Virus record (IMG/VR): IMGVR_UViG_3300017963_000190
Span: 124,001 to 188,000 of that record
Reading direction: 5' to 3' (one strand)
Length of the DNA stretch: 64,000 nt
Under the pieces are notes generated by a model. It had not been told where the DNA came from. It ran no database searches and saw nothing but the letters and a program-made list of their open reading frames with translations. The translations under genes were made by a program, and so were the position numbers. The first letter of the stretch is position 1. Each line of letters begins with the position of its first letter. Below, in pieces: positions 9,558 through 62,371 of this stretch.

Positions 9558-9618
9558 AGGTCGAACTCCTTGTCTGACACTGGTTCTGTGTCTCTATTTT
9601 ACAGTGCGCTGTGTGTTT

Positions 9619-12600
9619 CTAGCGACGTGACTTCAACACTGGTCTATGTGGCATCCAGAATGCATCTAGTGCGGTTCCATGCAGATCTGCTGCGGTGTAG
9701 TAATCTGAATAGTTAGCACCAGCATAAAACAGATTCATGCTGGTTCCCCCTGTAGGTCCACCCGATATTTGCAAAACAGCTTGGTTCCTGTAATCTGGAT
9801 CCTCTGGGCGCATAGCCGTCCCGTAGCATACGTATGCAACAGGTCCTCCATGATCTCTGTGGAGATACACCTGATTACTCGTTGCGAATAGGGGCTCTCC
9901 TGGCATATAAGGAACCGAAACAGGAGGTTCTGTCTCTTGGTCTATAAGATCGAAAACCGTCAAGAGGGCATTACTGAGGGCGGTGCCCGATCCAGGTACC
10001 AGTACTGGCATGCTGAATCTATACGTGTTCGTGCCGAAAAATAGACCCCTTCCTGCACCCATACCATTGTCTGGAGCAGAAATATACGACTCCAACGTGG
10101 ATATGGTGGATGGACTCCAACTTGGTGGGTATCCAACACGAAGCCCCTCAAGAGAAGTCATACTGGAGGCATACGTTATTTCGTTACCTTGTGTATAGCT
10201 TGCTGTGGTTCCGTACTCCGAGAATGTTTTTCTACTGCAGCTTGATGAGAACGGCAGTTTGATTAAATCTACCGACCGTTGGGTGTTCCACGTTGACCCT
10301 AAAAGTAGCTGTGCATTGTTGTAGAAATACTCAGAGTCCGAGACCACTGAAGTATTCCACATTAGTCCTGTGCTGTGCTGTTCGACATAGTTTAAGTGAT
10401 ACTCTACTGCTAGTCTATCATAGACACCACCAAGACGTACTAATTCATGGGTGATCACCGATCCAGGATGCATGAAAAAAGCCATGTCCTCGATGGCCGT
10501 TCCACTGTTGATTGGAATTTTGCTTGTATACCGAGGCTTCTTATTGTTCATGTCCAAGTAGCCAGCGGGTGTTGACACCAGTGCTGAACCACCAAGGGAC
10601 AGTAAAAATATACCGCTGCCGGACGTTGGGAAAAAGCTGGAGATATCCGCGTTGGTACGTATACGTTTAACAATTTCGCCGCCGCGTGTGACCGGGTTTA
10701 TCCAATAGCTGGCGTTGTTTATAGCAGCTAGGCTCCAGTATTCTAGGAACAGCGTTGGATTGCCTGTGGTTTCTTTATAAGAAGACGGCGCAATCACCGA
10801 CGTCTCGTCTAATTTTTTCGGTTCGCCGTGTGCAGCGAGAGGTGTTAGCCCGTTTATGAAATGGTGATACCGCCTAAGGTCAACAAAGGCGACATAGCTT
10901 GGTTCATACCCAGGAGCATAGCTCAGATGGCCAGACGCCACGCCGGCCCTAGACGGGTCGATATCGAAATCCATGACTCCCGTATGGTAGTTGGACGATA
11001 TGGAGTCGAACATTTGAGAACGTTGCGGGAAGGGAAGCCTGAGAATAGCAGCTGGGGCTAATCCTCTACCTTCTCCAGCACGTTCGTTTAGCTCCACCGT
11101 ACCTAGTGGATGCTGCGGCTTCACCAGATCTGTTACGTTGTACTCCTCAAATCCTGGAACGCTTACAAGCGATAGTGGTGAATGATTAACCGGCTGACCC
11201 GACCAGCCATCTACCCCAGAGTAATACGAGCAAGCCCCAGACTGGCTTACAAAGAACTCGCTATTGTTTTCCACCTGCCCGTGAAGCATCTTTTTGGCTT
11301 TAGTGAGAGCTCCAGGCAGAACAGGGGTTTTTCCGCCGTCGGACATCAATCCTTGGTAGGGTGTGTACGTGTAGTGAATTACTACCTGGTCTGCTGCAGC
11401 GGAAGTGAGAGGTTTGTGTGCCGGAGCTATCACGAGCAATCTGGTATCTGTAGCAGCCGTAGTGATAATACTCATAAGATTGCTATTCTGGTATCCCCGT
11501 ATTCCACCCCCACCAGCACCCCCTAGCCCTGTGTCTAGCCATGTGTAGTCTGATACCGGATCTGGTCTCGTCCACACACAGGGCATATTTAAATAGGTCT
11601 TTCCGCCAACCGTCAAGTTGCGCCATGTAGCAGATCCAATGCTATAGGCGGCTGCAACACCTGCCCCGGGAGGTGCACCGAAATCTATCTCGTTCTCCTC
11701 CCACTCGAAATAGGCTTGTACAGACTTCCCGCCTTTGCCTATTTCTACCCACTTGTTCACATCAGCAGTCTCGAAGAATATGACAAATTCGGCATCAAAC
11801 GTGTGTGGGCCACCAGAGAAATTGACCGTAATGGCATTTCTAGCCGCAGCCATCGTCATGCTCGAAATGATCGTTGTGACGTCGCTGCCGTAATTTGACC
11901 TGGTAGACATTTTGTCGATGCCTACCATGGTAACAGTGCCGCTTACTCCAGAAGACGCAGTAACGTCCGCAGCGGTTATGGTGACAGAGCTAGCTGCTGC
12001 TATGGATTTTCTCACTACGGTGTACATAGGACCCAAATGCATCTCTTCGTTCGTGCCGCTTGGATCCTTCCTAACCGAATGCACGACGTCTGGGATCTCT
12101 GCGAGACCGTAATTCGCGGAATAAGGGCTTCCTGTGAAGCTGCGATCGTAGTGGACCCACCACGATAACACAGCGGTCGCTGGCGCACTTACGCCCCCTG
12201 GATGGGCTCCGAGGTTAATGTGCCCTTCCATGGTGATAGCTCTTCCGGTGCTATCCATCGCGGTAACTTCAAACCCCTGCCCATCTAGGTAAAAGCCTGG
12301 TTGTGTGTTGTCTGCTTTGTACAAAAATGGGATTGTATATACTGCGTTCGACCCATCTATGTATTTGGCTGCGGCAGGGGAGAAATCAATGCTGCGTTCG
12401 TCCGCTTCTTCTCGTGTTGACCATAAAGGAGGACCGTAGAAATCGTTGTCAGCTCGCTCTGCGTACAGTGCTGCTGGTATATGCCTTACTATTTGAAAAT
12501 ACTGGTTTGGGATAGCAGAAGAGTGTATTTGAAGAACACCACGAGGTAGTCCAGGCCCGGGGCCTGGTTCGTACGTGTAATCGTACAGATCCCCAGAAGA

Positions 12601-33626: not shown

Positions 33627-34172
33627 TCAACCGCCGCTGTACCTACGATTCCAATTTGCGTTCTCATCCAGGCGAATCTGTAGGCGCATAGTGTCTTTTG
33701 CATCCCCTAGATGACTTTGCACAGCTGAACAAAGCTTCTCTAGAGCTTTCCACTTCTCCTGCAAGATAGCGAGCTCGGGTAGAATGCTCGCCATAATCAC
33801 CTTAGCTGCCGCTGCGCTAGTACTTTTGGAGATCACGCCAGCGGCTGTAAGATCGGCCCGAGCTAGTATTTCTGCCTTATGCAGTGCTCGTGTAACCCTG
33901 AAAATATAGAATTGCATGACAAGCACCCGATCTAGCCATGCTTGAGCTTTTTGCAGCGCTTCTTGCGCCTTGATCACTGATTTTTTATCCTCCACTGTCA
34001 CACGCTTTGGAATGGACTTCGCAATGTTTATATAGGAGCGCAATTCACCGACGAGGGAGGTAGGGACCTTGAATTTATCTGCATTTTCTTCAAGGCCAAG
34101 CAAAATGGCCTCCAGCTGCTCTCGTTCTCTTAGCTCATCTACTTTGGATTGATCTAGACTAGCTTTAGGCAC
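33627..34172 (-). CDS. Helical hypothetical protein (181 aa, GTG start)
   Basis: ORF with AGAGG/GGTG RBS and a TCTTGTAAA motif upstream. Confidence 0.65.
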   Translation of the reverse strand: MPKASLDQSKVDELREREQLEAILLGLEENADKFKVPTSLVGELRSYINIAKSIPKRVTVEDKKSVIKAQEALQKAQAWLDRVLVMQFYIFRVTRALHKAEILARADLTAAGVISKSTSAAAAKVIMASILPELAILQEKWKALEKLCSAVQSHLGDAKDTMRLQIRLDENANWNRRYSGG

Positions 34173-34346
34173 ACTTCACCTCTAGGACCCGTTGGAACCT
34201 ACTTCTGTTTTACAAGATGAAGGACGAATCTCTGAAAGCTTCTTTTCAGCCTGGAAAACTATTATTCAGCATAGGAAGCATGAACGGTGACAGATTGGTG
34301 TGATGGTAAAATGTGTCTGTGAGACAATGGAAAAATGGATCTAGCC

Positions 34347-35737: not shown

Positions 35738-35746
35738 CTCCTTATT

Positions 35747-36712
35747 TTACAAGGAGATCTCCCGATTCTCGCCGCGGGCGTCCTGGGTACTGTCGTTCTG
35801 GACGGTGTCTATTTTGACGTCGACCTTTTTTGTCTCCGTCTTATTGGAGGAATCTTCATTAGATTCGATTACTTGGGCTACTAGCTCATGTCCTGGATTG
35901 AGGCGGCAGGCACTCACCTTGTTCTGCGTGCCGTCGACATTGTCTACGTCGTAGATGTCGACAACCCCAGCATCCACAGCACGCTGGAACAGCTGCTGCT
36001 TGAGCTCAGGGGTGCGCATCCCGTCCAGGCGCCACATCACCTTGTTGATGAAATAGCGAGCTCCCACGAAGGGCATTCGATCTTCGCTGCTATGTAGCAG
36101 CCGGATAAGTGCATCGAATGGGTAAGACTCGATGTTGGCTGATGGTTTCTTATCCACAGGCGGCGCTTCGTCGCTGTCGTCCTTGAAAATGGCGCGGCTC
36201 GGGAGATAGATACAGCTGTCGCGCGACAGCACGCGCCGGTCACGTGGGTAGTTGCCTACTAGAATGACAGTGATCCCCCTGCTGATTGCTTGTCGAGCCA
36301 ACGCTGTGTAGTCGGTAGGGCCGACAATCAGGATGCAGATTTCAATGCTGCCGTGCAGAATTTCTGTGTGAGCGTCAAAAAGCAGGTGGAGGTTTACGTC
36401 GTCTTTCGTTACCCCCTGTGCAGTCGTGGCCACCGGAGTAATGCCCCGTTTCAGCCATTCTTCTGCATCGAGCCCATCGGCCTCCTCCATCACAGTGGTG
36501 TAGTAAACCACAGCTTTGGATAAGCGCCCAGATGTACGAGCAAACTCCTCAATGGGGGGAGCTAGTACAGAGTCCTCGTTGTGGTTGTCGATCAACACGG
36601 CGTCCAGATCTACAAAAAGCCCGACATTGGGGCGTGATCTCATACCGATGATGCGGTCCTGTAGGGAGCTGAATCCGCGGTCTGTGTGTTGTCTGGATCT
36701 CTTGTTGTGCAT
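35747..36712 (-). CDS. NYN (LabA/DUF88-like) domain protein with C-terminal winged-helix-like domain; start revised to the ATG at 36712
   Basis: GLFVDLD...KDDVNLHLLFD...CILIVGPTDYTAL...RGITVILVG follows the NYN fold pattern; GAGGAG RBS before 36712 removes the overlap with uvrD. Confidence 0.7.
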   Translation of the reverse strand: MHNKRSRQHTDRGFSSLQDRIIGMRSRPNVGLFVDLDAVLIDNHNEDSVLAPPIEEFARTSGRLSKAVVYYTTVMEEADGLDAEEWLKRGITPVATTAQGVTKDDVNLHLLFDAHTEILHGSIEICILIVGPTDYTALARQAISRGITVILVGNYPRDRRVLSRDSCIYLPSRAIFKDDSDEAPPVDKKPSANIESYPFDALIRLLHSSEDRMPFVGARYFINKVMWRLDGMRTPELKQQLFQRAVDAGVVDIYDVDNVDGTQNKVSACRLNPGHELVAQVIESNEDSSNKTETKKVDVKIDTVQNDSTQDARGENREISL

Positions 36713-39064: not shown

Positions 39065-39648
39065 AGACCATCTCTCCAATTGTCTGCGGTTTCTAAATGC
39101 GTGGCCCCATCACTGAACCCCGCCTCATCGTGCGCTCTGGTTTTTCCTTTATAGACTAGCAGGTAGTCGCATACACCAATGCCTGCCTTATACAGGCGCA
39201 TGTTGTCGTCGGTAGCTATGGGAGCTGGATCCTTACGTCGCACATCTTTTTTGTCGGTGTAGCAGATCGCTACGTACCATGGATAGGCATGGATAACTGG
39301 TGTGCCCACAAACATCAGGATGTACCCGAGCAGCCGCTCGCGACTAAACTTAGCTGAGCGGCCGTAGACGCCCAGAAGGGATACCGTGTCCCCGTGCTGC
39401 TTGATGGTCTTGGTGACCATCTCTTCGTCGTGGGCCAACCCCTTTAGCTTCAAAACGAAGCCGTTGTCCTCGCAGGTAGTGAGGAAAGTCTTGTCGTAGG
39501 CGTCCCAATTTTTCGTGGCCAGCTTTATTAGTCTCGCGAGCTTTCCACGTCCTCTCTGTGCTTTTGTAAGTCCACCTGGGATAGGTAGTACTCGATTGTG
39601 CCGTCTTGTATATTTTCGGCCCTTACGATTATTTGCGCGCGATTCCAT
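39061..39648 (-). CDS. Hypothetical protein; start uncertain (track start overlaps the clamp gene by ~120 nt)
   Basis: Fills the gap between the clamp and 38840 ORFs. Confidence 0.5.
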   Translation of the reverse strand: MESRANNRKGRKYTRRHNRVLPIPGGLTKAQRGRGKLARLIKLATKNWDAYDKTFLTTCEDNGFVLKLKGLAHDEEMVTKTIKQHGDTVSLLGVYGRSAKFSRERLLGYILMFVGTPVIHAYPWYVAICYTDKKDVRRKDPAPIATDDNMRLYKAGIGVCDYLLVYKGKTRAHDEAGFSDGATHLETADNWRDGL

Positions 39649-40742
39649 GATTCAATCCTTAGCGGCGCAACATCTGGCGCCAGCGCGACCACTTCCGTAA
39701 AGTATAGTTGATTGACGTATATGATGTGCGGCTCACCATCTCCGAGCTCGATCCTCTCAGATGGTATAGTGGACAGAGCTTTGTTTTTCTCCTGCCTGGC
39801 CGCCATCTGCACCTTTTTGGGAGTCACTCGGATATTGAGTACGAGTGGAGTACTGTCCGACGAAACACTTTTGATGTCGTTCAGCGCCTCCATCATATCC
39901 TTGCGCTTCACTGAGAACTTGCTGTCACAGACTCCAGCTATCGTGCTCTGGTACGCCTGCTCCGCATCTTGGAACGGAAGGTCCAGGGTAGGGTAGAATA
40001 CGTCTGCGTCCTCTGTCTGGAATCTGACCATGGAGGCCATCTCTTCTTCTGCGCGCGTGTGCACACTTATTACTACCTCTTTTGCGGTGACGCTGTCAAG
40101 TATTCTTCCCAAGGCAGTTGGCTTCAAAATAAATTTGGTGGAAGTCCGCACTTTTACTGTGGGAGATATCCGGACAAACCGTGCATAGCTGAAGAAGTCA
40201 ATGCCACAGATGTCGAGCCGGTTCGCCTTTTTCCCGCGTCGAAACTGGAACTGCATTCTGAGGTCATCCACCTTGAGGATATGCTTCAATTCTACCATAG
40301 AAGCCGCGGCGGCCAACATAGCGGTGGGTAATTTGACCACCGCTTTAAGGTTAGTAATGTCCGGCTGCGCGGTCTTGAATAGGTCCTCTGAATCCGTATC
40401 CAAGGCGAGATTGAACTTCGATTTTTTGTTGGAAATCTCTATTTGATCTGCGTCGTTTTGCGCGTCGAGCGTGAGCTCTCCTGAGAGGCGCAGTTTCGAT
40501 ATAGAATCGAGCTCAACGTACGCTCGTCCGGGCCGCATCACTGTAGCAGGAACGGCGAGTTTCACGTAGGCTCCCAGAAAAGTCGATTCCACGAACAGCC
40601 CCTTTTCTGTCACCGTGAGCCTCCCCTTCATGGGAATAGGCTGCTCATCCTTCTTTTTGGTCTTGGGGTCGCTTAGTCTCTGGAGAGCTAGTGCAGCCTT
40701 GATGGCTTTTTTGAACTCCGTGGCCTTAGTAGTGGCTTTCAT
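39528..40742 (-). CDS. dnaN: DNA polymerase III beta-like sliding clamp
   Basis: About 400 aa with three repeated clamp-like domains; matches DnaN pattern (F.V.RKDMMEAL, IYVNQLYFTEVV, EYYLSQV); replication context. Confidence 0.7.
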   Translation of the reverse strand: MKATTKATEFKKAIKAALALQRLSDPKTKKKDEQPIPMKGRLTVTEKGLFVESTFLGAYVKLAVPATVMRPGRAYVELDSISKLRLSGELTLDAQNDADQIEISNKKSKFNLALDTDSEDLFKTAQPDITNLKAVVKLPTAMLAAAASMVELKHILKVDDLRMQFQFRRGKKANRLDICGIDFFSYARFVRISPTVKVRTSTKFILKPTALGRILDSVTAKEVVISVHTRAEEEMASMVRFQTEDADVFYPTLDLPFQDAEQAYQSTIAGVCDSKFSVKRKDMMEALNDIKSVSSDSTPLVLNIRVTPKKVQMAARQEKNKALSTIPSERIELGDGEPHIIYVNQLYFTEVVALAPDVAPLRIESWNRAQIIVRAENIQDGTIEYYLSQVDLQKHREDVESSRD

Positions 40743-41689
40743 CGTGCTTCACGCTCGTTTCTGGTAAGCAGCCTTATCACATTTTCTTCGATGAGGATGT
40801 CATTCTGCTGACAAAATCTATGGAGCCTGCTCTTCGAGGCCGCGCCGGTCATGTTTTTTACGCTCAGTGCGTCCCTGGCACGTACCAGATCGAAGTTTCT
40901 TTGGGCCTCTCGTCTATGTTTTACAACACGCTCAAGCTCCCTTGTACTAATGACCTGCTGCGCTTTGGCTGCTCGGTAAGCATCTCTGGGGCAAGTTCCC
41001 ATGGCCGCGAGCTTTTTTATCGATGCTGTGCGCATGCGTGGGACCGCTCGGGGGATGTTGTCCGCCGGATCCCCCAAGAACGCTTTTAGACAAGCCACGT
41101 TCCTCGGAAGCACGCCCAGCACTTCCTTGCATTTGGATGCATTTATGATCCCAAGCTTTTGAGTTTCCACCACAATTCTGTCACCCTGGATCACTTGCCA
41201 TAAGTCTCTATCTTCGCTAACCACGGTGATCTCCGTTTGTGGGTGCCTATTTTTTGCCCACACTGCGATAGCATCATCAGCTTCACCTTGTGGAGCTCTC
41301 GTCGCCCGGATAGCTAGATTTTCCAATAGTTTCAGAGATTTCATGTAGGTTTGCATGACCTCTATATTCTGCACCCGTTGGGCTTTGTAGCCGTCCCATA
41401 TCCTTCGTCGGTGCTGCTTCCCAGCTCCCTCTAATGCGCATACTAGTGTCGCATTTGGGTACCTTTTTCGTAATTTCGCTAGCATCAACATCAATAATTT
41501 CATGGTCTTGGACTGACGTTTTTTAACATAATAGTCATGCAACTGCTGATTCTCTAATGATTCCAGTTTTCTATCTGTGTTGACTGAATAAAATGCACGG
41601 TAGACCACGTTCGGCCAGTCCATTACAACCTGTTGATTATAATGAGGAAATATTCCGGTCATGCCTGTTTCCGGTATTGTGCTTTTCAT
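40739..41689 (-). CDS. 5'-3' exonuclease / flap endonuclease (Pol I N-terminal, RNase H-like); start approximate
   Basis: VMDWPNVVYRAF, YKAQR, GEADDAIA, VSEDRDLWQ, AFLGDPADNIP motifs. Confidence 0.9.
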   Translation of the reverse strand: MKSTIPETGMTGIFPHYNQQVVMDWPNVVYRAFYSVNTDRKLESLENQQLHDYYVKKRQSKTMKLLMLMLAKLRKRYPNATLVCALEGAGKQHRRRIWDGYKAQRVQNIEVMQTYMKSLKLLENLAIRATRAPQGEADDAIAVWAKNRHPQTEITVVSEDRDLWQVIQGDRIVVETQKLGIINASKCKEVLGVLPRNVACLKAFLGDPADNIPRAVPRMRTASIKKLAAMGTCPRDAYRAAKAQQVISTRELERVVKHRREAQRNFDLVRARDALSVKNMTGAASKSRLHRFCQQNDILIEENVIRLLTRNEREAR

Positions 41690-47855: not shown

Positions 47856-50582
47856 TCAGCAGCTAGTGTACCCGCATGATTCACACCACGGGCATTTTCC
47901 TGGTATTTGCACGTAAGCAGCTATACCACAGTCTGGGCAAATGTCTGGGTGGGCGCCTACTATGCTGTCTGTGTTCTCAGAGCTGTCAAACGCGCTTGTG
48001 CTTCCTTTACTCTTCACTATAGTGCTGATTTCTGGACCGGTCTCGTCTTTACCAGTTATCTCTTGGATGAAGTCTTCGAGTCGATCCTCTCCAAGGGGTA
48101 TATTTGACAGCGGGAAATTCCCGGACAAGTAGTCGTGGATGATCTGCGCTATTCCGTCTGGAAGGGATATCACCTGGTTCGTGCCGAATCCTACAGACCC
48201 CTTTCCCGGAATCTTGTGTAGTTGGTCTCTGATAATCTCCAGTCTTGTTTCCTGGGAGATGTATTCCCCGTTTGGCCAGCGTAGGATGGCAGACACGAGC
48301 CTTCCTAATGCTTGTACGTCTGCGGATACATCTCCTTTGCCGCTGACGAGGAACATGTCGTACGGGTCACCGCTTTTTGGATGCATGCGTATAGTTCCAT
48401 GTACCCTCCCCACCGGGGTGTCCTTGCTGTGGGTAACGCTCAAACCAAAGTCGATTTTGGGTCGTAGATCCCCAATGCTTGGATTTTTGTACTCGTCCAC
48501 TACCTGCACCGGTATGTACCCGTCATCCCCCTCGGTTTCCTCAGTCTCCGCTGACTTATAGTAGAGAACTTGCCTGTCCCGCGACTCGTCTCGATACACC
48601 GTTCCACCTTTGCACCCGAGCTCGTACATTAGCATGTAGGCCGATGCTACATCTTGTTTGGTAGCTGAGTTGGGGAGGTTGACCGTCTTAGAGATGGATG
48701 CGTCCACCCATTTTTGCGCGGTAGCTTGTGTTCTTACATGCTCTTCAGGAGTGATGTCTTTAGTGGTCACAAAATAGTCTGGAGAGTTGTCGCCGAATTG
48801 CTGGCGTATCTCTCCAAGCACACTGGCCTCTTCGTTTGCAGATCCTATACGGCTCCTGGCGATCCATGAGGGAAGGAAGTAAGGCTCGATTCCTGTAGTG
48901 GTGTTGAGCATCGTTCCCACAGATCCTGTAGGTGCCACAGTATTGAGTGTGACGTTTCTGACTCCATGCTGACGGATGTCAGTTACGAGATTGTGGTCCT
49001 CTTGTAGAGTTTGTATGAAACCGGAGCTGACAAATTTTCCTGCATCGAATTTAGGGAAAGGCCCGCGTTCCATCGCGAGCTCACAGGAGGCACGGTAGCT
49101 TTCTGTAGCTAGCAGGCGGAACAGCCAGTCGGTGAATACGAGCGCTTGCTCGGATCCGTATCGTAGCCCTAGTCGTATGAGCATCTCTCCGTAGCCAAGG
49201 ATACCTAGTCCTACTCGCCTCTCTGATTTTTGCTGCGCCTCGATCTTCGGGTCGTGGTACACGTTAAGATCGGTGACGTTGTCTAGGAAGCGTACTCCCA
49301 TGTGAACCGCACGTATGAAGTCTTCCGACTGGAACGATTCCATCGCCTCTGCGGCGGCAACTTCTTGTGGGGGTAACTTACCAAGATGCACGAACTGCGA
49401 AAGGTTGAGGTGAGCTAGATTGCAGATACCATATGGGGGCAAGAATTGCTCGCCACATGGATTTGTGCAGGTAAGTCTATTATAGTAATAAGAGTTGGAC
49501 AGTTTGTTAGCACGCTCCAGAAAGAGGATCCCTGGTTCGCCACTTTCCCATGCGTGGTCGATGACAAGCTGCCATAGCTCCTTTGCCTTCATGGTTTGGA
49601 ACACTTTTATTGGACGTTCCTGCTGCCGCCATTTGTCGATGTTCCCATCCCATTCTTTATCATAGGACGGGTGTGTGATGTCGGGGAATACCAACTGCCA
49701 ATCATCGTCATTCTTTACGGCATTCATGAAATCATCGGATATCAGCACCGAGACATTTGAGTTTTCTAGGAGTCCTTTGTTGCGCGATATCGTCTGTCCC
49801 CCTGCTCTGAACTCCATCCGTTGCGCTTTCGCGGTGACGAACTCGATGATGTCTGGGTGCCAAATCCATAGGCCCTGAAGAGACGCCCCTCTCCTGGATC
49901 CCCCTTGTTCCACGGCCCCGGTTATTTGTGAGTATTGTTCCATCCAACTGACGGCGCCGCTTGATCGCCCATTCACCTTCCGCACCACCTCGCCGCGGGG
50001 TCTGTGTGTACTGTTATCCCATCCAATCCCACCACCTAGGCTGAATGTGTCGAATAACTGCTCCCAGTGCTTTGCTATCCCTTTTCTGGAATCGTGGGGA
50101 GCTGGAAACACGTAGCAGTTGAAAAAAGTGAGCGTTCGATCCTTACAGCCAAGACCGGCCAGGATTCTCCCTGCTGGGATGAATCTTCGCTCTACCATCG
50201 CTTTGAATACCTCGTCCCTAAACGCTGTATTCTGCGGCTCGTCCGCTATGATTCCGTTGGATACCCGACGGCAAACATCCTCGTAAGTTTTTTCTAGCAG
50301 CACTTCGATCTTGTCTCGTGGAACTGCTTTCGCCACCTCCCACTCATCTTCGTTTTTGTCGCGATCCACCAAGGCCACATCATACCGCCTATCTCCCGAC
50401 TCGCTCTCCACTATTCTCAGCACGCGCCCCAACTCCCTGGACTCGATTTTCTCGCCGTCTTTCTCGAACACCCGCTGCAGCGCAACAATCACATCGTCCC
50501 CATCCTGCACTTTAGTGGTAGCATCCTTACGCGCGTAGCGATCTGCTAGGATTCGATCTTGATAAGCACCCGATTGAGACAT
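47856..50582 (-). CDS. nrdJ: Class II (adenosylcobalamin-dependent) ribonucleotide reductase with C-terminal TSCPD-like and Zn-ribbon region
   Basis: FFNCYV, GGSRRGA, TNPCGEQ, TVAPTGS, TGIEP, QKWVDASISKTVN; C-terminal CPDCG...CESCGYTSC; no beta-subunit gene nearby. Confidence 0.93.
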   Translation of the reverse strand: MSQSGAYQDRILADRYARKDATTKVQDGDDVIVALQRVFEKDGEKIESRELGRVLRIVESESGDRRYDVALVDRDKNEDEWEVAKAVPRDKIEVLLEKTYEDVCRRVSNGIIADEPQNTAFRDEVFKAMVERRFIPAGRILAGLGCKDRTLTFFNCYVFPAPHDSRKGIAKHWEQLFDTFSLGGGIGWDNSTHRPRGEVVRKVNGRSSGAVSWMEQYSQITGAVEQGGSRRGASLQGLWIWHPDIIEFVTAKAQRMEFRAGGQTISRNKGLLENSNVSVLISDDFMNAVKNDDDWQLVFPDITHPSYDKEWDGNIDKWRQQERPIKVFQTMKAKELWQLVIDHAWESGEPGILFLERANKLSNSYYYNRLTCTNPCGEQFLPPYGICNLAHLNLSQFVHLGKLPPQEVAAAEAMESFQSEDFIRAVHMGVRFLDNVTDLNVYHDPKIEAQQKSERRVGLGILGYGEMLIRLGLRYGSEQALVFTDWLFRLLATESYRASCELAMERGPFPKFDAGKFVSSGFIQTLQEDHNLVTDIRQHGVRNVTLNTVAPTGSVGTMLNTTTGIEPYFLPSWIARSRIGSANEEASVLGEIRQQFGDNSPDYFVTTKDITPEEHVRTQATAQKWVDASISKTVNLPNSATKQDVASAYMLMYELGCKGGTVYRDESRDRQVLYYKSAETEETEGDDGYIPVQVVDEYKNPSIGDLRPKIDFGLSVTHSKDTPVGRVHGTIRMHPKSGDPYDMFLVSGKGDVSADVQALGRLVSAILRWPNGEYISQETRLEIIRDQLHKIPGKGSVGFGTNQVISLPDGIAQIIHDYLSGNFPLSNIPLGEDRLEDFIQEITGKDETGPEISTIVKSKGSTSAFDSSENTDSIVGAHPDICPDCGIAAYVQIPGKCPWCESCGYTSC

Positions 50583-50738
50583 GGGCCTCCTCGATTTATC
50601 GGCAGGAACTCGTAGCTGGGTATAAATGCGCTAAGGTTCCAAAACCGTTGATGTTTGCCGTAAGTTAGGGCACGAGGCCACCCGCCTCGACCCCTTCCTA
50701 TTACTTTACAAGATGTGCAGGAAATTTGGTGGGGTAGG

Positions 50739-54263: not shown

Positions 54264-54339
54264 AAAGTTCATTTATAGGTAACCTGATTCCCAGCAGTTC
54301 TTGTTACCTTCTATTATAGAGCAGTGAGGGAAAGTAGTT

Positions 54340-56388: not shown

Positions 56389-56401
56389 GTGATAAAGGTC
56401 C

Positions 56402-57646
56402 ATGGCGAAAGTCAGCGAAGTAAAGCAAGTTCAGAACTTCTATAAGAAAAACAAGAAAAGTTTTCAGAATATAGAAGGTCTGGAGGCTGGTGCCACAGCC
56501 GGAACTAATTTTGGGTTCCTTGAGCGTGACTACACGGAGCCGCGCTCCGCAATGATAGTCACGAGCAAGGTGTGGCTGGCCCAGAATAAGTATATAGTTC
56601 TGTGGGTGAACCCCCGGGAAATGGGGTGGACTCTTGGTCGCAGGGAGGCCATTTCGAAAACAGCTACTGGGGTGGTACGCAACACCTGGAAAAACCGAGT
56701 TCGTGGTACCTACTACGATGAGCCTCTTTTGAATATCACCTTTCAAACGGGTAATATTCTTCCAGGAGTCACCGTTCCATCTAGCAGATTTGGTACGCGC
56801 GTTGTAGAATCCACTCCTGTTGCCACACCAAATGAGCAAGGGGTTATTGTAGACAGGTACGAAAAGGTTCGGAATAAGCGTGGTCCACTCCAAGCTGATC
56901 CAGCTGCAATCGCTGACATGATCAAGGCCCCTCCTGTTCCTCCCGGTCTGGAAAATTTTTACGATTTTTTGGGCCTGATCGACCAGGATGTTCTTGCTGG
57001 GAGTGGAGAAAATCGTCATATCCTTTTATACAGAACACGTGTTTTTCCACGAATGCGCTTGGAGGGCTATTTTCAGGGAGAGCTTAGCTTTACGGAGTCA
57101 GCCGACAACGCCAATCGGCTGACATGGAGCATGGCTTTTCAGGTGTACCATAGCATTCCTAGGTTCTACCATCCGTCGCAGCTGAAAGCTGCGTATTCGG
57201 ATGCGGTACGCACGCATGCTTTAAGCGATTTCCTGCCCAAGAGCTTCGACTTCAAGAAGTTTGATGAGGGTTTCACGGATGAGAAAGATCAGTATCTAAG
57301 CGACCCGACCACTTGGAACAAGAAGAAGATAGAGACCGATAAAGGAAGCGGTGCTCAGAAAAAGGGCAACGCTTTGGTGACCCCGGAAGGTTACACTGCT
57401 GCCGGTTGGAAAAAGAAGATCCAGAAGCAGAATAAGCAGACGTCGGATAACTACCAGAAGCAGCTCGAATCGCTTTCCAGGGTGTTTAACCTAGGGGAGC
57501 CTTTAAAGAGCAAACTCTTGAAGTACATGTCCGACCTGGAGAACCAGGCACTCGCCGATGGGAGCTACGTGCCTCGTAGTGTGGTGGATCAGCAAGCAAG
57601 GGCATGGTTGGCTTCCAACGATCCTGATGGTGACGGGCAGCTTTAG
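56402..57646 (+). CDS. Putative tail-tube-fold baseplate/initiator protein
   Basis: LWVNP.EM...SKTATG...ITFQTG...LEGYFQGELSFTESA...WSMAFQV pattern. Confidence 0.45.
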   Translation: MAKVSEVKQVQNFYKKNKKSFQNIEGLEAGATAGTNFGFLERDYTEPRSAMIVTSKVWLAQNKYIVLWVNPREMGWTLGRREAISKTATGVVRNTWKNRVRGTYYDEPLLNITFQTGNILPGVTVPSSRFGTRVVESTPVATPNEQGVIVDRYEKVRNKRGPLQADPAAIADMIKAPPVPPGLENFYDFLGLIDQDVLAGSGENRHILLYRTRVFPRMRLEGYFQGELSFTESADNANRLTWSMAFQVYHSIPRFYHPSQLKAAYSDAVRTHALSDFLPKSFDFKKFDEGFTDEKDQYLSDPTTWNKKKIETDKGSGAQKKGNALVTPEGYTAAGWKKKIQKQNKQTSDNYQKQLESLSRVFNLGEPLKSKLLKYMSDLENQALADGSYVPRSVVDQQARAWLASNDPDGDGQL

Positions 57647-58575
57647 GCTGCCAAGGTCGTCTCCATTCTTTTTACCAGTCGATACAATCTATTCAAGTGG
57701 GGCATCGGCATATTGCCCGGATCTTTCTTTTCTGGGCACATGAAATGCTTCACCGGGAACATCTCCATCAAACTCGCAGCGATGTCATAGCGAACCCCTT
57801 CTCCTCCTTCGTCCCCATCCATAGCTACCACAACGGCTTCGGCATTCGCATTGATTAAGTGGGTACGATTACTGTCGTCGTAATTTCTCGTTCCCATTAT
57901 TGCCAGCGCGGGGATGTTGTAGTTGACGAGCCGCAGCGCATCGTACGGCCCCTCTACTAAGACGACCACTTTCCGATTCATGGCTATGACCGCGTCTAGC
58001 GGAAAGAGCACATCCTTGGAAGACATGTTTGGTGCATTTCGGTAGGGCTTCAGGAGCTTCTCGCCAGGCGGCGCCTCGTCTAGCCGTCTCGCTACCCACC
58101 CCTTTACCTCGTCGTACATCATTACTGGAAATAGAATACGTTCCGCACGTATGCGTGGATCGTCGTCGAACCACCCAAAGGCTCCAACGCGTTTTAAGGT
58201 TTTCACGCGGAGCCGACGCCACGGCTTTGTCCAGGGGCGTAGCCCCCAAGGGAGGTCCACTTTCGCCATGGCCTTTTGGTAGCGCTTTTCCATTTTGTGC
58301 GCGAGCACTAGAAAATCGTTGGGCCGGTTCTCCTCTGTGAGCGTGTCTACTTTGATGTAGTTGGCGATGTAGTCCCACTTGGATCCCTTTACGCCGCAAC
58401 CAAAGCACAGAAATGCGCCGTCGAGGCGGCGGATACTCAGGCTAGGGGTCTTGTGGTCATGTCCTCGGAAGCAGAATGCTTTGATGTTCTCCTGGTTGCT
58501 ATCTCCCATAGAGACGCGCACCCCCGCCGCTTCGAGCTGGGCTACAATAAAGGTGGACAGATCTGATTCGGCCAT
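57643..58575 (-). CDS. dnaG: DNA primase (CHC2-like Zn finger + TOPRIM)
   Basis: CFRGHDHKTPSLSI...CFGCG; VVLVEGPYDAL; VAMDGDEGG; KDPG. Confidence 0.88.
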   Translation of the reverse strand: MAESDLSTFIVAQLEAAGVRVSMGDSNQENIKAFCFRGHDHKTPSLSIRRLDGAFLCFGCGVKGSKWDYIANYIKVDTLTEENRPNDFLVLAHKMEKRYQKAMAKVDLPWGLRPWTKPWRRLRVKTLKRVGAFGWFDDDPRIRAERILFPVMMYDEVKGWVARRLDEAPPGEKLLKPYRNAPNMSSKDVLFPLDAVIAMNRKVVVLVEGPYDALRLVNYNIPALAIMGTRNYDDSNRTHLINANAEAVVVAMDGDEGGEGVRYDIAASLMEMFPVKHFMCPEKKDPGNMPMPHLNRLYRLVKRMETTLAA

Positions 58576-58655
58576 CGTGCCTCACATTCGTCTTGTAAAC
58601 TAATAGGTAGTGCACCGCATGCCTTCACCTTGGTTTTACAGCATTGGAGTAGTAG

Positions 58656-59588
58656 ATGGGCATTTTTGACATCCCAAAAGCAGAGAAATTCCCAGCTGGA
58701 CTGGAAAAGAGCTTTGGAGATATCCGCTACGGCCGCCGGAAAGTCCGACAGCGTGAGTACGAGGAGCTCCGCGCCAGCAATCTTCCTGTGTGCCCTCGGG
58801 CCTACATTATATACAGGCGCTCACCTCTGCGCAAGAGGCCTCTCGTGGAGGAGACTTTCATCAGCGAGACAGCCACGTTGTTGGGTACCGCGCTGCATTT
58901 AGTGCTTCAGAAGTGGTTTGGTTTGCAGGGGCACCTTTTTGGGAACTGGGTTTGCGTACACTGCAAAAAGATTCGCCGCCATCAGCTGGGAACGCAGAAG
59001 TGCGTCGAGTGCGGGCGCGAGATGATTTACCATGAGTACGCAATCAAACCGAGCAAGTACGCACCTTTTAGCGGGCACATCGATGGCATCCTGGTGCTGC
59101 CTAATGGCACAATTTATCTTATCGATTTTAAGGGTAGCAGTGTTCCAGCCATCCGGGAAATAAAGAAAAATGGGCGTCCTAAGGAGAGCCACTACTTGCA
59201 GGTGAACGCCTACGCTCACGCGGTCAACAAAGATCTGAAGCGTTTCGGGCTGACTGAAAAAATCCAGAAGATAATTATTATCTATGTAGACCGCGCCCAG
59301 CCTTGGAGAACGTGGTTGCCCATGCAAGTCCCCTTGAGTAGGGAGCTCTACAGGGAGGCTGTTGGACGAATCCACTACACCCGCGAGTGCCTTAAAACCG
59401 GTAAGGTTCCGCGTGGTTTGTGTGTTAGCCCGTCGGATGAGTACGCAAAGTACTGCCCCTGGCGGCAGGTATGTTTTTCGCCGGTGATCGAGGGACTGCT
59501 CAGCGATGATGTTGAGCCTGAAAGCAAAAAACAGGAGGTGTCAGAGCAGCAGCTACTCGCTTTGGCTGCTTACTTAGAATCTCATTAG
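58656..59588 (+). CDS. Cas4-like PD-(D/E)XK exonuclease
   Basis: VCPR...GTALH...GHIDG...IDFKG...QVNAY...C....YCPWRQVC (Fe-S cysteine pattern); extra CxxC...CxxC insert. Confidence 0.85.
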   Translation: MGIFDIPKAEKFPAGLEKSFGDIRYGRRKVRQREYEELRASNLPVCPRAYIIYRRSPLRKRPLVEETFISETATLLGTALHLVLQKWFGLQGHLFGNWVCVHCKKIRRHQLGTQKCVECGREMIYHEYAIKPSKYAPFSGHIDGILVLPNGTIYLIDFKGSSVPAIREIKKNGRPKESHYLQVNAYAHAVNKDLKRFGLTEKIQKIIIIYVDRAQPWRTWLPMQVPLSRELYREAVGRIHYTRECLKTGKVPRGLCVSPSDEYAKYCPWRQVCFSPVIEGLLSDDVEPESKKQEVSEQQLLALAAYLESH

Positions 59589-59619
59589 TTGCCACTTAGT
59601 CACTGAAAGGATGCTTCTC

Positions 59620-60126
59620 ATGACCGACTACAGAGACGCCCCGGAGCCGGATGCTCCTGAAGATACAGTTACAGAGGGAGAAGATTTATCGAGGCAGGAC
59701 GCTATTGATTTTGTTGACCGAGAGATTGATAGCACGGAAGACATCGAGAGTCTCAGCGTCGAAGCCTTTGTCACTTTAGCCATTCTTCGGGTAGTGCGCT
59801 CGCCCGAAGATGTTCGTGTTCATGTTACGAGGTCGCAGCGCATGGTAATTTTGGAATACGAGGTTCGGGAGGACGACATTGGTCAGGTAATAGGGCGGGG
59901 TGGCCATACAATAGATGCGATACGTTCCCTAGCCAAGTCTATCACCGGGAAGGTAGAGGATTCTTCACAAGAGGAATCTGAGGAGCGCCCTCCACATAAT
60001 CCTGTAGAGTACATCATCAAACTTATCGATGATACTGGATCCCCAGTAAGATTTGGGAAACCGAGGGGAGATCGTAGGCGCCAGGGGCACTTCCACCGGA
60101 ACCGGCGGGGGAGGTATCGTCGTTAG
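59620..60126 (+). CDS. khpA: KhpA-like single KH-domain RNA-binding protein; start revised to 59620
   Basis: VRSPEDVRV...LEYEVREDDIGQVIGRGGHTIDAIRSL; intact GxxG loop; GAAAGG RBS. Confidence 0.8.
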   Translation: MTDYRDAPEPDAPEDTVTEGEDLSRQDAIDFVDREIDSTEDIESLSVEAFVTLAILRVVRSPEDVRVHVTRSQRMVILEYEVREDDIGQVIGRGGHTIDAIRSLAKSITGKVEDSSQEESEERPPHNPVEYIIKLIDDTGSPVRFGKPRGDRRRQGHFHRNRRGRYRR

Positions 60127-60740
60127 GGGATCTCAATGAGTCCTCCGCTGCGGGGAGGCCGTGTGAACTGTTTGACTGGGATCCTCTTTTCGCGCGCTTT
60201 CTTCTCCATTCCCGCAGCCTGCGTAGCCGCCGCGCTTTTGGCTTGCGCTTCCACTTGGATCCTCTCCGCAGCGAGGTCGTCTCTTTGTTGGAGCGCCAGC
60301 CGTGAGGCCATCACCAAATGCTTGCAGAGGTGGGGGATCATCTGTCGATTGCGCTCGCGAGGCAGTTGCCCATTCGACAACTTAATGGAGGAGCTGTTGC
60401 GCCTAGTGTTCGCTACTTCACAATTAAAGGTGTAGTAGGGACAAGAGCACCATACCCAGACCGGCGTATCCTTCCCTGGGGGGCCAAAAAACCGTACATA
60501 CGAGGCACGCTTCCCATCTGTGCATGTCAAGTACGTGCGTAGTTCGTTGTAAAAAGTTTTGTCTTTTCGGTAGGATCGCTTGAAGCCTTCCCTACTCCCC
60601 ACCCCGTATTCCTTGCGGATCACGTGACATTGTGTGTTGGCACGCTTGATGATCTCTGGGTTGAACCGTGCCGTGAGCTGCGCCAGCTGACCTAGCGTCA
60701 TGCGATTTACAGGGGTGGCGGCGTAGCGTTTTTTCGCCAT
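60123..60740 (-). CDS. SWIM-type zinc-finger protein; start revised to 60740
   Basis: VWVWCSCPYY...LCKHL (CxC...CxH); GGAG RBS. Confidence 0.7.
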   Translation of the reverse strand: MAKKRYAATPVNRMTLGQLAQLTARFNPEIIKRANTQCHVIRKEYGVGSREGFKRSYRKDKTFYNELRTYLTCTDGKRASYVRFFGPPGKDTPVWVWCSCPYYTFNCEVANTRRNSSSIKLSNGQLPRERNRQMIPHLCKHLVMASRLALQQRDDLAAERIQVEAQAKSAAATQAAGMEKKAREKRIPVKQFTRPPRSGGLIEIP

Positions 60741-60757
60741 TTTACGCTCCAAAAGTG

Positions 60758-60786
60758 TTGACTCAGATCCATGACTGTACCATACT
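60758..60786 (+). promoter_or_regulatory. sigma70-type promoter upstream of the phage sigma gene
   Basis: TTGACT-N17-CATACT. Confidence 0.65.
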
Positions 60787-60830
60787 CGGACATGGATCTC
60801 TAGAGAGTAACTATCGCGGGATACCTCCTG

Positions 60831-62264
60831 ATGCAGACACAGTCGACCTCGGATGACTGGCAAACGTTCAACGCTTTGGCTGAGCGCACGCTTCAGGAAG
60901 CCCCTCTTCCTAAAGATGAGCTCACCAAACTGTTTATTCGTATCGAAAAACTAATATATTCGGGGATTGGTTATCTATTAAACACGACCACCTTTACTGA
61001 AGACAACCTTTGCTATCTCCTTGCCGAGATTGCTTCAGGCGTTATCAAAAGCAGGAAGGTGTACAAAGGGCGCCGGATCCGAAGGCGGATACCACTTACC
61101 GAAGAAATCGAAATGGGATCCGAAAACAAGCGGATCTTCGGCATCGGTTTCGATTTGTTCAAGCTATCGCGCATGAGTAGGGAGGAGGCGGCACCTCTGG
61201 TAAAGCGTATTATTCGTACTCTTCGTGTCTCTACCAGCACCTATGAAAGTATGCTGCTCACGTTTGCCAAGGAGGGTCAGAGGTATCGGGATCTGTCGGA
61301 TGAGCTCACCGAGGTAACCCTTGATCTTCTGGAGCAGCGCCGTAAAAATAGCAAGCGCGCCACAAAGGGATCCTTGGCCAAAGAAGAAAGCTTGACCCTG
61401 GAGGCTTCCAGGATGATAGACGAACTGGAAATCGTGGAGATGAATGTTGGGTGCGTTGAGCGTAATTTTCTCTACGGTACCATACGAGCCATAGACCTCA
61501 TTGTTCGTGAGATCCGACGTTTGCAGGAACGCATACTGCGGGCATACTCCAGGCTCATCTTGAAGCCTGTGCGTGATAGAGCTCAGGGAGAGATGGAGGC
61601 TCTGGATTTGTTTCAGTCCGGCAGCCTAGGTCTCGCGAGAGCCATCTCTTTATATGATGTAAGAAGTGGCACCAGTTTCCCCACCTTTGCCACTTGGTGG
61701 ATTCGACAGAAGATTTTCGGGAGCATCAAATTCCGCGGCCCGCTAATCAAGCTACCTGGGTCTGTGCTTGAGAAGTACCAACAAATACGCGCAGCTGAAC
61801 GCCACTTCAGCTCAGACCCAGAAAAGCACTCTTCCTACACGGTGGAGGATATCGCAGCTTACTGCAAGACCTCTGTGAAATCTGTGGAGCTCGTGCGCAA
61901 GAAAGTGCAGAGCACGCAGGTCATATCCTTGGATTCGATGGTCTATGATAATGAAGAGGGCTTCGAGAACGAGTCGGCTACCGATCGAGCCCTCCTAGAT
62001 GATTCATTAGAAGAAGAGGAAGAATTTGCAGCACGGCAGGACTTTGTGGAGTCTGTGTTAGACCACCTGGAGCCGGACCAGCGCAATCTAGTGTGTCTTC
62101 GCTACGGAGTTATTGACAGCGTAAAGGTTGAGTTAAGTCCTCGTCAGGTTCTGCGTGAGACATTCCGTCAAGCAGCGTGTAGAGCAATTTTGCAGAGGTC
62201 TATGGCGGTCACCGCGGATGAGCGTCTGTCTCTGCTTCGTCCAGAAGAGCTTCCTCCCGAATAA
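60831..62264 (+). CDS. Phage-encoded sigma70-family (RpoD-like) sigma factor
   Basis: Region 2 DLFQSGSLGLARAISLYDVRSGTSFPTFATWWIRQKI; region 3 (VEDIA...ISLDS); region 4.1 (LEPDQRNLVCLRYG). Confidence 0.88.
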   Translation: MQTQSTSDDWQTFNALAERTLQEAPLPKDELTKLFIRIEKLIYSGIGYLLNTTTFTEDNLCYLLAEIASGVIKSRKVYKGRRIRRRIPLTEEIEMGSENKRIFGIGFDLFKLSRMSREEAAPLVKRIIRTLRVSTSTYESMLLTFAKEGQRYRDLSDELTEVTLDLLEQRRKNSKRATKGSLAKEESLTLEASRMIDELEIVEMNVGCVERNFLYGTIRAIDLIVREIRRLQERILRAYSRLILKPVRDRAQGEMEALDLFQSGSLGLARAISLYDVRSGTSFPTFATWWIRQKIFGSIKFRGPLIKLPGSVLEKYQQIRAAERHFSSDPEKHSSYTVEDIAAYCKTSVKSVELVRKKVQSTQVISLDSMVYDNEEGFENESATDRALLDDSLEEEEEFAARQDFVESVLDHLEPDQRNLVCLRYGVIDSVKVELSPRQVLRETFRQAACRAILQRSMAVTADERLSLLRPEELPPE

Positions 62265-62371
62265 ACTTCCTGCGTGTAGGATTTCGCTTCTGTCTTGTAA
62301 AATACGAGAGTGCGGCAAGCAATAGATTCACAGAACCAGAAAACTGCTGATTCACGAAAGGAGTGACGAGC

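What the first reader, a model, noticed from the sequence alone, without database searches (positions are those of the whole stretch)
9595..62304. Conserved TCTTGTAAA-N-TA element upstream of genes on both strands: candidate phage-sigma promoter
Always in the sense orientation of the next gene: TCTTGTAAAATA (62293-62304 +, SSB), TCTTGTAAACTAATAGG (58591-58607 +, Cas4-like), TCTTGTAAAGTAATAGG (50713-50697 -, RNR; 16 of 17 identical to the previous copy), TCTTGTAAAACA (34217-34206 -, 181-aa gene). Weaker copies are CACTGTAAAATA (9606-9595 -) and CCTTGTAAAATA (35754-35743 -, overlaps a stop codon). The four strongest copies lead the RNR, Cas4-like, SSB and 181-aa genes, and none has a -35 TTGACA. 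This fits a middle promoter recognised by the phage sigma factor, or an activator box.
Basis: partly seen in the sequence, partly recalled or inferred. Interest (0 to 1): 0.6.

Follow-up and report, generated by a model that had tools for sequence, protein, structure and literature searches.

The report
Jumbo-phage -10-type promoter motif TCTTGTAAAATA
The repeated TCTTGTAAAATA element is real and is almost certainly the promoter that an uncultivated 260-kb phage uses for its replication, tRNA, lysis and virion genes; it has no -35 box and is most likely read by the phage's own RpoD-like sigma factor.

Summary
The window is part of a 260-kb metagenomic jumbo phage. TCTTGTAAA occurs 4 times in the window (0.37 expected) and 11 times in the genome. 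Every copy points at the next gene, and nearly all lie between genes.

The same element sits at the same intergenic positions in related phages. In a complete 350-kb relative, 18 of 18 copies are intergenic and point at the next gene.

The motif contains a -10-like hexamer (TAAAAT) directly preceded by G, with no -35 box. Three copies lie 15-16 nt before tRNA 5' ends, and several lie less than 30 nt before start codons. It therefore acts at -10, not as a -30/-35 box.

Canonical TTGACA-N17-TATACT promoters fill a separate early region and also drive the window's sigma gene.

The motif heads replication genes, tRNA genes, a holin-like gene and the roughly 58-kb virion module, so it is a "non-early" promoter rather than only a "middle" one.

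The 477-aa RpoD-like sigma is the best candidate reader. It is conserved across the lineage and is the only sigma in the complete relative. No gp55, gp33 or phage RNA polymerase was found. This assignment is inferred: there are no RNA data and no biochemistry.

The parts
62293..62304 (+). Class II promoter copy TCTTGTAAAATA, 68 nt before the ATG (62372) of the gp32-like SSB gene
   Evidence: SSB fold match to T4 and RB69 gp32. A motif sits at the same sigma|SSB intergenic position in L001, L003, L006, L007, L008 and L032.
58591..58607 (+). Class II promoter copy TCTTGTAAACTAATAGG for the Cas4-like PD-(D/E)XK nuclease gene (58656-59588)
   Evidence: Conserved in the primase|nuclease intergenic region of L001, L003, L006, L007, L008, L009, L031 and L032.
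58632..58641 (-). Previously unlisted copy CTGTAAAACC facing the primase gene (57643-58575, -). It forms a face-to-face pair with the 58591 copy inside the 80-nt intergenic region
   Evidence: The same paired arrangement occurs in L001, L003, L006, L007, L008 and L031.
50697..50713 (-). Class II promoter copy TCTTGTAAAGTAATAGG, 115 nt upstream of the RNR gene (47856-50582, -)
34206..34217 (-). Class II promoter copy TCTTGTAAAACA before the 181-aa gene (33627-34172, -). This gene is the first of the long minus-strand virion module (baseplate wedge, tail fibres, tail sheath further on)
35743..35754 (-). Copy CCTTGTAAAATA overlapping the stop codon of the 358-aa ORF. A GTG start codon (35737) lies exactly 14 nt after the T of TGTAAA
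   Evidence: Whether it functions is uncertain.
9595..9606 (-). Weaker copy CACTGTAAAATA in the 61-nt intergenic region before the 98-aa gene (9261-9557, -), inside the virion module
60831..62264 (+). Sigma2: a 477-aa RpoD/SigA-like sigma factor and the candidate reader of the motif
   Evidence: Pfam Sigma70_r2. Profile match to SigA/RpoD regions 1.2-4.2 at E 1.5e-30. The AF2 model aligns full-length with E. coli and Vibrio RpoD. 48 homologues, all from metagenomes.
60758..60786 (+). Class I (canonical) promoter TTGACT-N17-CATACT in front of the sigma2 gene

Best explanation
TCTTGTAAAATA (family-wide core G-TAAAA-Y, seen here as yTGTAAA) is a single-element, -35-independent promoter of the -10 type.

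The hexamer TAAAAT supplies T-12, A-11 and T-7. An invariant G sits at -13, and TCT lies upstream of it. Transcription should start about 14 nt after the T of TGTAAA.

Proposed cascade:
1. Host RNA polymerase with the host primary sigma transcribes the early region and the sigma2 gene from canonical TTGACA-N17-TATACT promoters.
2. Sigma2, the 477-aa RpoD-like factor encoded at 60831-62264, then binds host core polymerase.
3. That holoenzyme directs transcription to the class II promoters. These drive replication and nucleotide-metabolism genes, tRNA genes, lysis genes and the virion module.

What is shown: the motif, its strand and position bias, its conservation, and the partition of the two promoter classes across the genome. 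What is inferred: that it acts as a promoter, the start-site position, and above all the assignment to sigma2.
For: Motif statistics and orientation.

Position counts give c-R-T-C-TTGTAAAATA with no -35 box.

The motif sits at -10:
- Three copies lie 15-16 nt before tRNA-Gly, tRNA-Glu and tRNA-Arg 5' ends.
- In the relative G001, at least 8 copies lie 12-27 nt before start codons.

Conservation in relatives:
- Motifs sit at the same intergenic positions in loci whose sigma2 is 45-70% identical.
- In those relatives, 26 of 98 TGTAAA copies lie in the 4.3% of DNA that is intergenic (p 7e-14).
- In the complete 349,793-bp relative G001, TCTTGTAAA is 18 of 18 intergenic and sense. TTGTAAAATA has 23 copies, none antisense. 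The consensus is caTCTTGTAAAAta.
- De novo k-mer enrichment in a 36%-identity relative (G003) ranks TGTAAA first.

Two promoter classes partition the genome:
- 36 intergenic class I promoters lie almost entirely at 2-65 kb, plus the sigma2 gene.
- Only one class I promoter lies in 65-182 kb, where class II copies head the operons.

- It is conserved across the lineage, with 48 homologues.
- It is the only Sigma70_r2 hit above Pfam's cut-off in the complete G001.
- It keeps the -10 melting and recognition residues that correspond to E. coli F427, W434, R436 and Q437, while the extended -10 residue H455 is an invariant Ser.
- Pfam Sigma70_r4 is not detected, and the first helix of the region 4.2 helix-turn-helix is shortened.
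- No gp55, gp33 or RNAP-beta homologue was found in G000 or G001.
- The motif varies between sigma2 clades: TTG-TAAAAT, TGG-TAAAAC in G002, and TAGAAT in G004, whose sigma2 carries the Q437E-equivalent change.
Against: No transcript 5' ends are available. Only DNA metagenome runs hold this sequence.

Sigma2 retains the four -35-contacting residues of region 4.2 (R584, E585, R588 and Q589 equivalents). It could therefore equally read the TTGACA class.

TAAAAT is a good host-type -10 hexamer, so the host primary sigma cannot be excluded.

The co-variation of motif and sigma2 clade is confounded with probable host changes, and in G004 it rests on only 4 sites.

G000 is only about 74% complete, so a further factor could be encoded in the missing part. 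The complete G001 argues against this.

Gene calls are my own approximation.
Confidence: 0.6

Rival explanations
1. The motif is a promoter read by the host primary sigma as a -35-independent (extended -10-like) promoter. A phage factor disables -35-dependent initiation, as gp39 does in Thermus phage P23-45. Sigma2 would then do something else, for example replace the housekeeping sigma on TTGACA promoters.
For: TAAAAT has the canonical T-12, A-11 and T-7. In relative G002 the motif is a textbook TGn-TAAAAC. Sigma2 keeps the -35-contacting residues. There is a precedent in PMC3950348.
Against: In G000 and G001 the G abuts the hexamer (-13) and is not at -14. The element is conserved across phages of 43-57% GC that probably infect different hosts. 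No gp39- or AsiA-like factor was identified, though none was specifically searched for.
Confidence: 0.2
2. The motif is a T4-style late promoter (compare TATAAATA) read by an undetected, highly diverged gp55-like minimal sigma or another phage-specific factor.
For: The replication and virion genes look distantly T4-like: gp32-like SSB, RecA/UvsX-like, Mre11/Rad50-like and clamp-loader genes, baseplate wedge phrog_6 and tail sheath. TGTAAA(A)TA differs little from TATAAATA. Many ORFs have no family assignment.
Against: phrog_234, phrog_12791 (gp55) and phrog_254 (gp33) give no hit even at E 10 in G000, and phrog_234 gives none in the complete G001. The motif also heads replication genes and so is not late-only.
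Confidence: 0.1
3. The motif is read by the second phage sigma (sigma1), a 296-aa RpoH-like protein at genome 40287-41177 (-), outside the window.
For: The protein has full Sigma70_r2 and r4 domains and its best family match is RpoH. The sigma-32 -35 box CTTGAAA superficially resembles CTTGTAAA.
Against: Only one close phage homologue exists; the next-best matches are cellular sigma-32 proteins at 39% identity. The complete relative G001 lacks this sigma yet has the strongest motif set. No CCCCAT-type -10 follows the motif and there are no sigma-32-type promoters in the genome. The motif sits at -10, not -35.
Confidence: 0.03
4. The motif is not a promoter core. It would be an activator or repressor box (MotA-box-like) or an RNA-level signal such as a processing site or 5'-UTR element.
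For: Strand specificity alone cannot separate DNA-level from RNA-level signals. Several copies directly follow tRNA 3' ends.
Against: No conserved -10 hexamer lies 11-13 bp downstream. tRNA 5' ends lie 15-16 nt after the motif and start codons as close as 12-27 nt. In the 80-nt divergent primase|nuclease intergenic region the two motifs are the only conserved elements, and each gene needs a promoter there. The distance to start codons varies from 14 to over 100 nt, so the motif is not RBS-linked.
Confidence: 0.07

Closest known systems
phiEco32 middle/late promoters read by phage sigma gp36 (consensus AATGTA centred at -11.5; PMC12276001)
   Same: Early genes use host sigma-70 promoters. All middle and late genes share one conserved -10-region element containing TGTA, read by a phage-encoded sigma bound to host core polymerase.
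   Different: gp36 is a small, distant sigma homologue that works with co-factor gp79. Here the candidate is a 477-aa primary-sigma-like protein with an NCR-like N-terminal domain. The consensus and its register differ, and no gp79 equivalent is known.
T4 late promoters (TATAAATA at -10) with gp55, gp33 and the gp45 clamp (my own knowledge; T4 annotation)
   Same: A -10-only promoter with no -35 box and an A/T-rich octamer ending in ATA. The phage has a distantly T4-like replication and virion gene set.
   Different: No gp55 or gp33 homologue was found. The motif also drives replication genes and tRNAs. There is a G at the second position and one extra A.
Extended -10 promoters, for example Thermus phage P23-45 middle/late promoters (PMC3950348)
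   Same: -35-independent, with a conserved G-containing extension immediately upstream of a TAnnnT hexamer. Used by a phage for non-early genes.
   Different: The canonical class has TG at -15/-14 with one spacer base. Here G is at -13 (TTG-TAAAAT), and only relative G002 shows the canonical TGG-TAAAAC. P23-45 encodes no sigma.
RpoD-like sigmas of 'group 2' jumbo phages (PMC7824862)
   Same: A jumbo phage without its own RNA polymerase that encodes a sigma close to cellular RpoD.
   Different: That survey assigns no promoters to such sigmas. This sigma family has only metagenomic homologues and scores below all NCBIfam cut-offs.

Membership tests
Sigma-70-family -10-type promoter | Intergenic, oriented toward the downstream gene, more frequent than chance | tested here: met
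   relatives.
Sigma-70-family -10-type promoter | TAnnnT hexamer (T-12, A-11, T-7) | tested here: met
   TAAAAT, TAAACT or TAAAGT in most copies of G000 and G001. The last position is C in some copies and in distant relatives.
Sigma-70-family -10-type promoter | Transcription start 6-8 nt downstream of the hexamer | not testable with these tools
   No RNA runs hold the sequence. Indirect support only: tRNA 5' ends lie 15-16 nt after the T of TGTAAA.
Canonical extended -10 class (TGnTAnnnT) | TG at -15/-14, separated from the hexamer by one base | tested here: not met
   In G000 and G001 the G directly abuts the hexamer (TTG-TAAAAT). The feature is met only in relative G002 (TGG-TAAAAC).
Canonical -35/-10 promoter | TTGACA-like hexamer 16-18 bp upstream | tested here: not met
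   Position counts show no -35 box. A separate class I with TTGACA exists elsewhere in the genome.
T4-type late promoter system | gp55 and gp33 homologues encoded | tested here: not met
   phrog_234, phrog_12791 and phrog_254 give no hit at E 10 in G000; phrog_234 gives none in the complete G001.
T4-type late promoter system | Restricted to late (virion) genes | tested here: not met
   The motif also heads RNR, primase, nuclease, SSB, dCTP deaminase and tRNA genes.
T4 middle promoter (MotA box at -30 plus a -10 element) | Box centred at -30 with a TAnnnT hexamer 11-13 bp downstream | tested here: not met
   No downstream hexamer. tRNA and start-codon distances are too short.
Sigma-32 promoter | CTTGAAA-N13-17-CCCCATnT | tested here: not met
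   Zero matches in the genome.
phiEco32 gp36-type promoter | One -10-region element shared by middle and late genes, with early genes on sigma-70 promoters | tested here: met
   Comparison with PMC12276001.
phiEco32 gp36-type promoter | Small gp36-like sigma plus gp79 co-factor | tested here: inconclusive
   The candidate sigma is 477 aa and RpoD-like, not gp36-like. gp79 was not searched for.
Group 1/2 (RpoD/SigA-like) sigma factor (for sigma2) | Regions 2, 3 and 4 present and scoring above family cut-offs | tested here: inconclusive
   Region 2 is above the Pfam cut-off. The profile aligns across regions 1.2-4.2 of SigA/RpoD at E 1.5e-30 and the fold match is full-length. All NCBIfam RpoD and SigA models are far below cut-off, and Sigma70_r4 is not detected.

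The most novel reading that the evidence does not exclude
A widespread, uncultivated lineage of distantly T4-like jumbo phages has no gp55/gp33 late system. Instead it uses a full-length, primary-sigma-like factor, with an NCR-like N-terminal domain, a Ser at the H455 position and a degenerate region 4.2. This factor reads a shifted extended -10 promoter (G at -13, TCTTG-TAAAAT, no -35 box) and so controls every non-early gene. That includes tRNA genes transcribed almost without a leader and possibly some leaderless mRNAs. Promoter variants track changes in the sigma between clades.
Probability: 0.45. Interest if true: 0.65.

Novelty: new member of a known kind. Interest (0 to 1): 0.5.

Why it matters
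The result gives a concrete, testable two-stage transcription programme for a phage lineage known only from metagenomes: canonical early promoters, then one phage-specific -10-only class.

It pairs an orphan family of RpoD-like phage sigma factors with a candidate cognate promoter. If the pairing holds, it offers a natural example of altered recognition just upstream of the -10 hexamer, with G at -13 where the canonical class has TG at -15/-14.

The motif can also be used to annotate operons and temporal classes in related metagenomic phage genomes.

Tried and rejected
- Nucleotide search against known phages found nothing. A single-protein scan of viral contigs with sigma2 found nothing. An alignment-based scan later found 7 loci.
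- Only DNA metagenome runs hold the region, so read laying was not used and no start sites could be mapped.
- There are no Rfam families in the window. In particular, no riboswitch was found in the 115-nt RNR leader.
- The sigma-70 consensus scan of window 47-64 kb gave 8 sites against 12.1 expected. Only the site before the sigma gene is credible.
- Many virion and early proteins have no Pfam or PHROG hit.
- The SSB gave no sequence-level hit. Only the fold search identified it.
I used loci from the viral-contigs collection instead.
- The T7-RNAP family search is uninformative because its controls were silent.
- One lookup returned no DNA.
- Literature searches for the motif found no prior description.
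- Rejected readings: -35 box or sigma-32 promoter (distance to tRNAs), MotA-type box, and chance.
Full report
CONTEXT. The window is bases 124,001-188,000 of a single 260,067-bp contig (52% GC) that the tools class as a virus record, linear and about 74% complete. It carries 37 tRNA genes at 208-258 kb. It has no nucleotide match among deposited phages. The only sequencing runs that hold it are sediment and seawater DNA metagenomes. It is therefore an uncultivated jumbo phage with an unknown host. No RNA data exist, so I did not use read laying.

THE OBSERVATION. Exact TCTTGTAAA occurs 4 times in the window against 0.37 expected, and no shuffle of 100 reached 4. One-mismatch matches anywhere are not enriched (17 against 11.3). 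The signal therefore lies in the near-exact intergenic copies.

Genome-wide there are 11 exact copies. Each is followed by a gene on the same strand. Ten are intergenic by my gene calls, although only 10-14% of the DNA is intergenic (p 1.5e-9).

The core TGTAAA occurs 21 times intergenic and pointing at the next gene, against 7 pointing away. In coding DNA it is unbiased (43 sense, 37 antisense). It ranks first of the 60 permutations of its letters for intergenic sense copies (mean 5.0).

Position counts over 19 sites give c-R-T-C-T-T-G-T-A-A-A-A-T-A. There is a weak A/T patch 13-15 nt upstream and nothing resembling TTGACA at -35.

A seventh window copy, CTGTAAAACC at 58641-58632 on the minus strand, faces the primase gene. 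It forms a face-to-face pair with the 58591 copy.

IT SITS AT -10. The motif contains TAAAAT, which supplies T-12, A-11 and T-7. Three copies lie 15-16 nt before the mature 5' ends of tRNA-Gly, tRNA-Glu and tRNA-Arg. Many copies, especially in the relative G001, lie only 12-27 nt before start codons, with a Shine-Dalgarno sequence in between.

A -35 box or a -30 activator box would put the start site inside those genes. No conserved hexamer follows the motif.

The predicted start is about 14 nt after the T of TGTAAA. Two ORFs begin exactly there: GTG at window 35737 and ATG at genome 230634. This hints at leaderless mRNAs, but I did not test it.

TWO PROMOTER CLASSES. K-mer enrichment in upstream regions also recovered canonical promoters, CTTGACA-N16/17-TTATACT. 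I found 42 strong hits, 36 of them intergenic. Nearly all lie at 2-65 kb in front of small early genes. A few lie in the tRNA region, one at 87.6 kb and one in front of the window's sigma gene (60758-60786, TTGACT-N17-CATACT).

Between 65 and 182 kb there is a single class I site. In that stretch the TGTAAA class heads the transcription units.

Genes headed by the motif:
- RNR (Pfam 2e-115).
- Primase and the Cas4-like PD-(D/E)XK nuclease.
- A gp32-like SSB. It has no sequence-family hit, but the model's best fold matches are T4 and RB69 gp32 cores (1gpc at E 2.9e-5).
- dCTP deaminase, a holin-like protein and a patatin-like protein.
- tRNA genes.
- The 181-aa gene at 34172. This gene opens the long minus-strand virion module, which includes baseplate wedge phrog_6, tail-fibre-like proteins and tail sheath phrog_15433.

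The class is therefore "everything that is not early", not specifically "middle". I found no third motif for virion genes.

RELATIVES. The window's sigma has 48 homologues, all metagenomic, at 37-71% identity. Their loci share gene order: primase, nuclease, KH protein, a divergent 205-aa gene, sigma, SSB, thioredoxin-like, RecA-like, Mre11-like, clamp loader.

TGTAAA motifs sit at the same intergenic positions in these loci, including the face-to-face pair between primase and nuclease and the sigma|SSB spacer. Across seven loci, 26 of 98 TGTAAA copies fall in the 4.3% of DNA that is intergenic (p 7e-14).

The strongest replication comes from G001, a complete 349,793-bp relative with direct terminal repeats. 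Its sigma is 64% identical.
- TCTTGTAAA occurs 18 times, and all 18 are intergenic and sense.
- TTGTAAAATA occurs 23 times, never antisense.
- Intergenic TGTAAA is 40 sense to 4 antisense.
- The consensus is caTCTTGTAAAAta.
- Class I promoters cluster at the genome ends.

More distant relatives:
- In G003 (36% identity), de novo enrichment ranks TGTAAA first (8 against 0.84), with consensus (g/t)TGTAAAAC.
- In G002 (37% identity) the motif is tgGTAAAAC, a canonical TGn-TAAAAC.
- In G004 (46% identity), whose sigma alone has the Q437E-equivalent change, TGTAAA is absent and four intergenic sites carry TAGAATg.

The common core across the family is G at -13 followed by TAAAA(Y).

WHO READS IT. 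The 477-aa protein (sigma2) has Sigma70_r2. A family profile aligns to SigA/RpoD from region 1.2 to 4.2 at E 1.5e-30. Its AF2 model (pLDDT 78) superposes over its whole length on E. coli and Vibrio RpoD. It scores below every NCBIfam cut-off.

It keeps the residues corresponding to F427, W434, R436 and Q437. The extended -10 residue H455 is an invariant Ser, and E458 is kept. The first helix of the region 4.2 helix-turn-helix is shortened, and Pfam does not detect region 4, yet R584, E585, R588 and Q589 are kept.

The genome also encodes a 296-aa RpoH-like sigma (sigma1) at 40,287-41,177, outside the window. Sigma1 has only one close phage homologue; otherwise it resembles cellular sigma-32 proteins at 39% identity. 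The complete G001 lacks it. The genome has no sigma-32-type promoters.

No gp55, gp33 or RNAP-beta homologue was found in G000 or G001. The T7-RNAP search is uninformative because its controls were silent.

Sigma2 is thus the only factor that travels with the motif. Its own gene is driven by a class I promoter, which fits a host-sigma-to-sigma2 cascade.

This remains an inference. Sigma2's intact -35-contact residues, and the good host-type hexamer, leave room for a P23-45-like scheme in which a remodelled host holoenzyme reads these -35-less promoters (PMC3950348).

COMPARISON WITH KNOWN SYSTEMS. The closest analogue in logic is phiEco32. Its early genes are on sigma-70 promoters, and all its middle and late genes are on one -10-region element (AATGTA centred at -11.5) read by the phage sigma gp36 (PMC12276001).

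T4 late promoters (TATAAATA) are similar in form, but the gp55/gp33 system is absent here and the motif is not restricted to late genes.

A survey of jumbo phages notes RpoD-like sigmas in phages without their own polymerase but assigns them no promoters (PMC7824862). Literature searches found no description of this motif.

VERDICT. The promoter interpretation is well supported (about 0.85-0.9). Assignment to sigma2 is probable but unproven, and the full statement rates about 0.6. "Middle" should be widened to "all non-early". The "activator box" reading is unlikely. This is a new member of the known kind "phage-specific promoter class with a phage-encoded sigma", and it is of moderate interest.

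Noticed in passing
genome 19-50 kb (outside the window; L010-L012): About 17 copies of a 25-nt repeat, GGGTTAAACCCTCACGCGTTACCAT. Each lies roughly 60-80 nt upstream of a class I TTGACA promoter of a small early gene. Function unknown.
   Followed up: no
window 54300-54326 (+) and 60795-60815 (-); also L001, L003, L006-L008, L030-L032: A conserved (T)TGTTAC(C/T)-yTyTAG element lies just 5' of the ribosome-binding site of two genes: the 391-aa gene, and the 205-246-aa gene divergent from sigma2. On the plus strand it reads AGAGTAACTA about 30 nt before the sigma2 ATG. It could be a translational operator or a third promoter type.
   Followed up: partly
window 58576-58655: The two TGTAAA motifs in the primase|nuclease intergenic region are face-to-face, so the predicted 5' UTRs would overlap in antisense by about 15-20 nt. 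The arrangement is conserved in six relatives.
   Followed up: partly
window 35737 (-); genome 230634 (+): Start codons lie exactly 14 nt after the T of TGTAAA, which is the predicted +1 position. These may be leaderless mRNAs.
   Followed up: no
genome 40287-41177 (-) = L012:287-1177: A second phage sigma factor of 296 aa. RpoH is its best family match but scores below cut-off. It has its own class I promoter. Its nearest relatives are cellular sigma-32 proteins (Binataceae, Acidobacteriota) at 39% identity. The complete relative G001 lacks it.
   Followed up: partly
genome 208-258 kb (L018-L020): 37 tRNA genes interspersed with small ORFs. Both class I and class II promoters occur there, sometimes in tandem, for example at genome 245.7 kb and 250.8 kb.
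   Followed up: partly
window 62372-63691: The gp32-like SSB has invariant H56, C74, C92 and C95 and a long acidic D/E/W-rich tail. This resembles the T4 gp32 zinc site and acidic C-terminus, yet no sequence family detects it.
   Followed up: yes
L004/L005 1-556; L006 7920-9890: In relatives, inteins with LAGLIDADG endonuclease domains interrupt the RNR gene and the homologue of the 205-aa gene.
   Followed up: no
window 50583-50696: The RNR leader is 115 nt long and contains a GC-rich hairpin just after the promoter. No Rfam family (for example a cobalamin riboswitch) matches it.
   Followed up: partly
window 40917-40928 (-): TGTTGTAAAACA lies inside a coding region, 175 nt upstream of the clamp-like gene (39528-40742). 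It may be an internal promoter.
   Followed up: no
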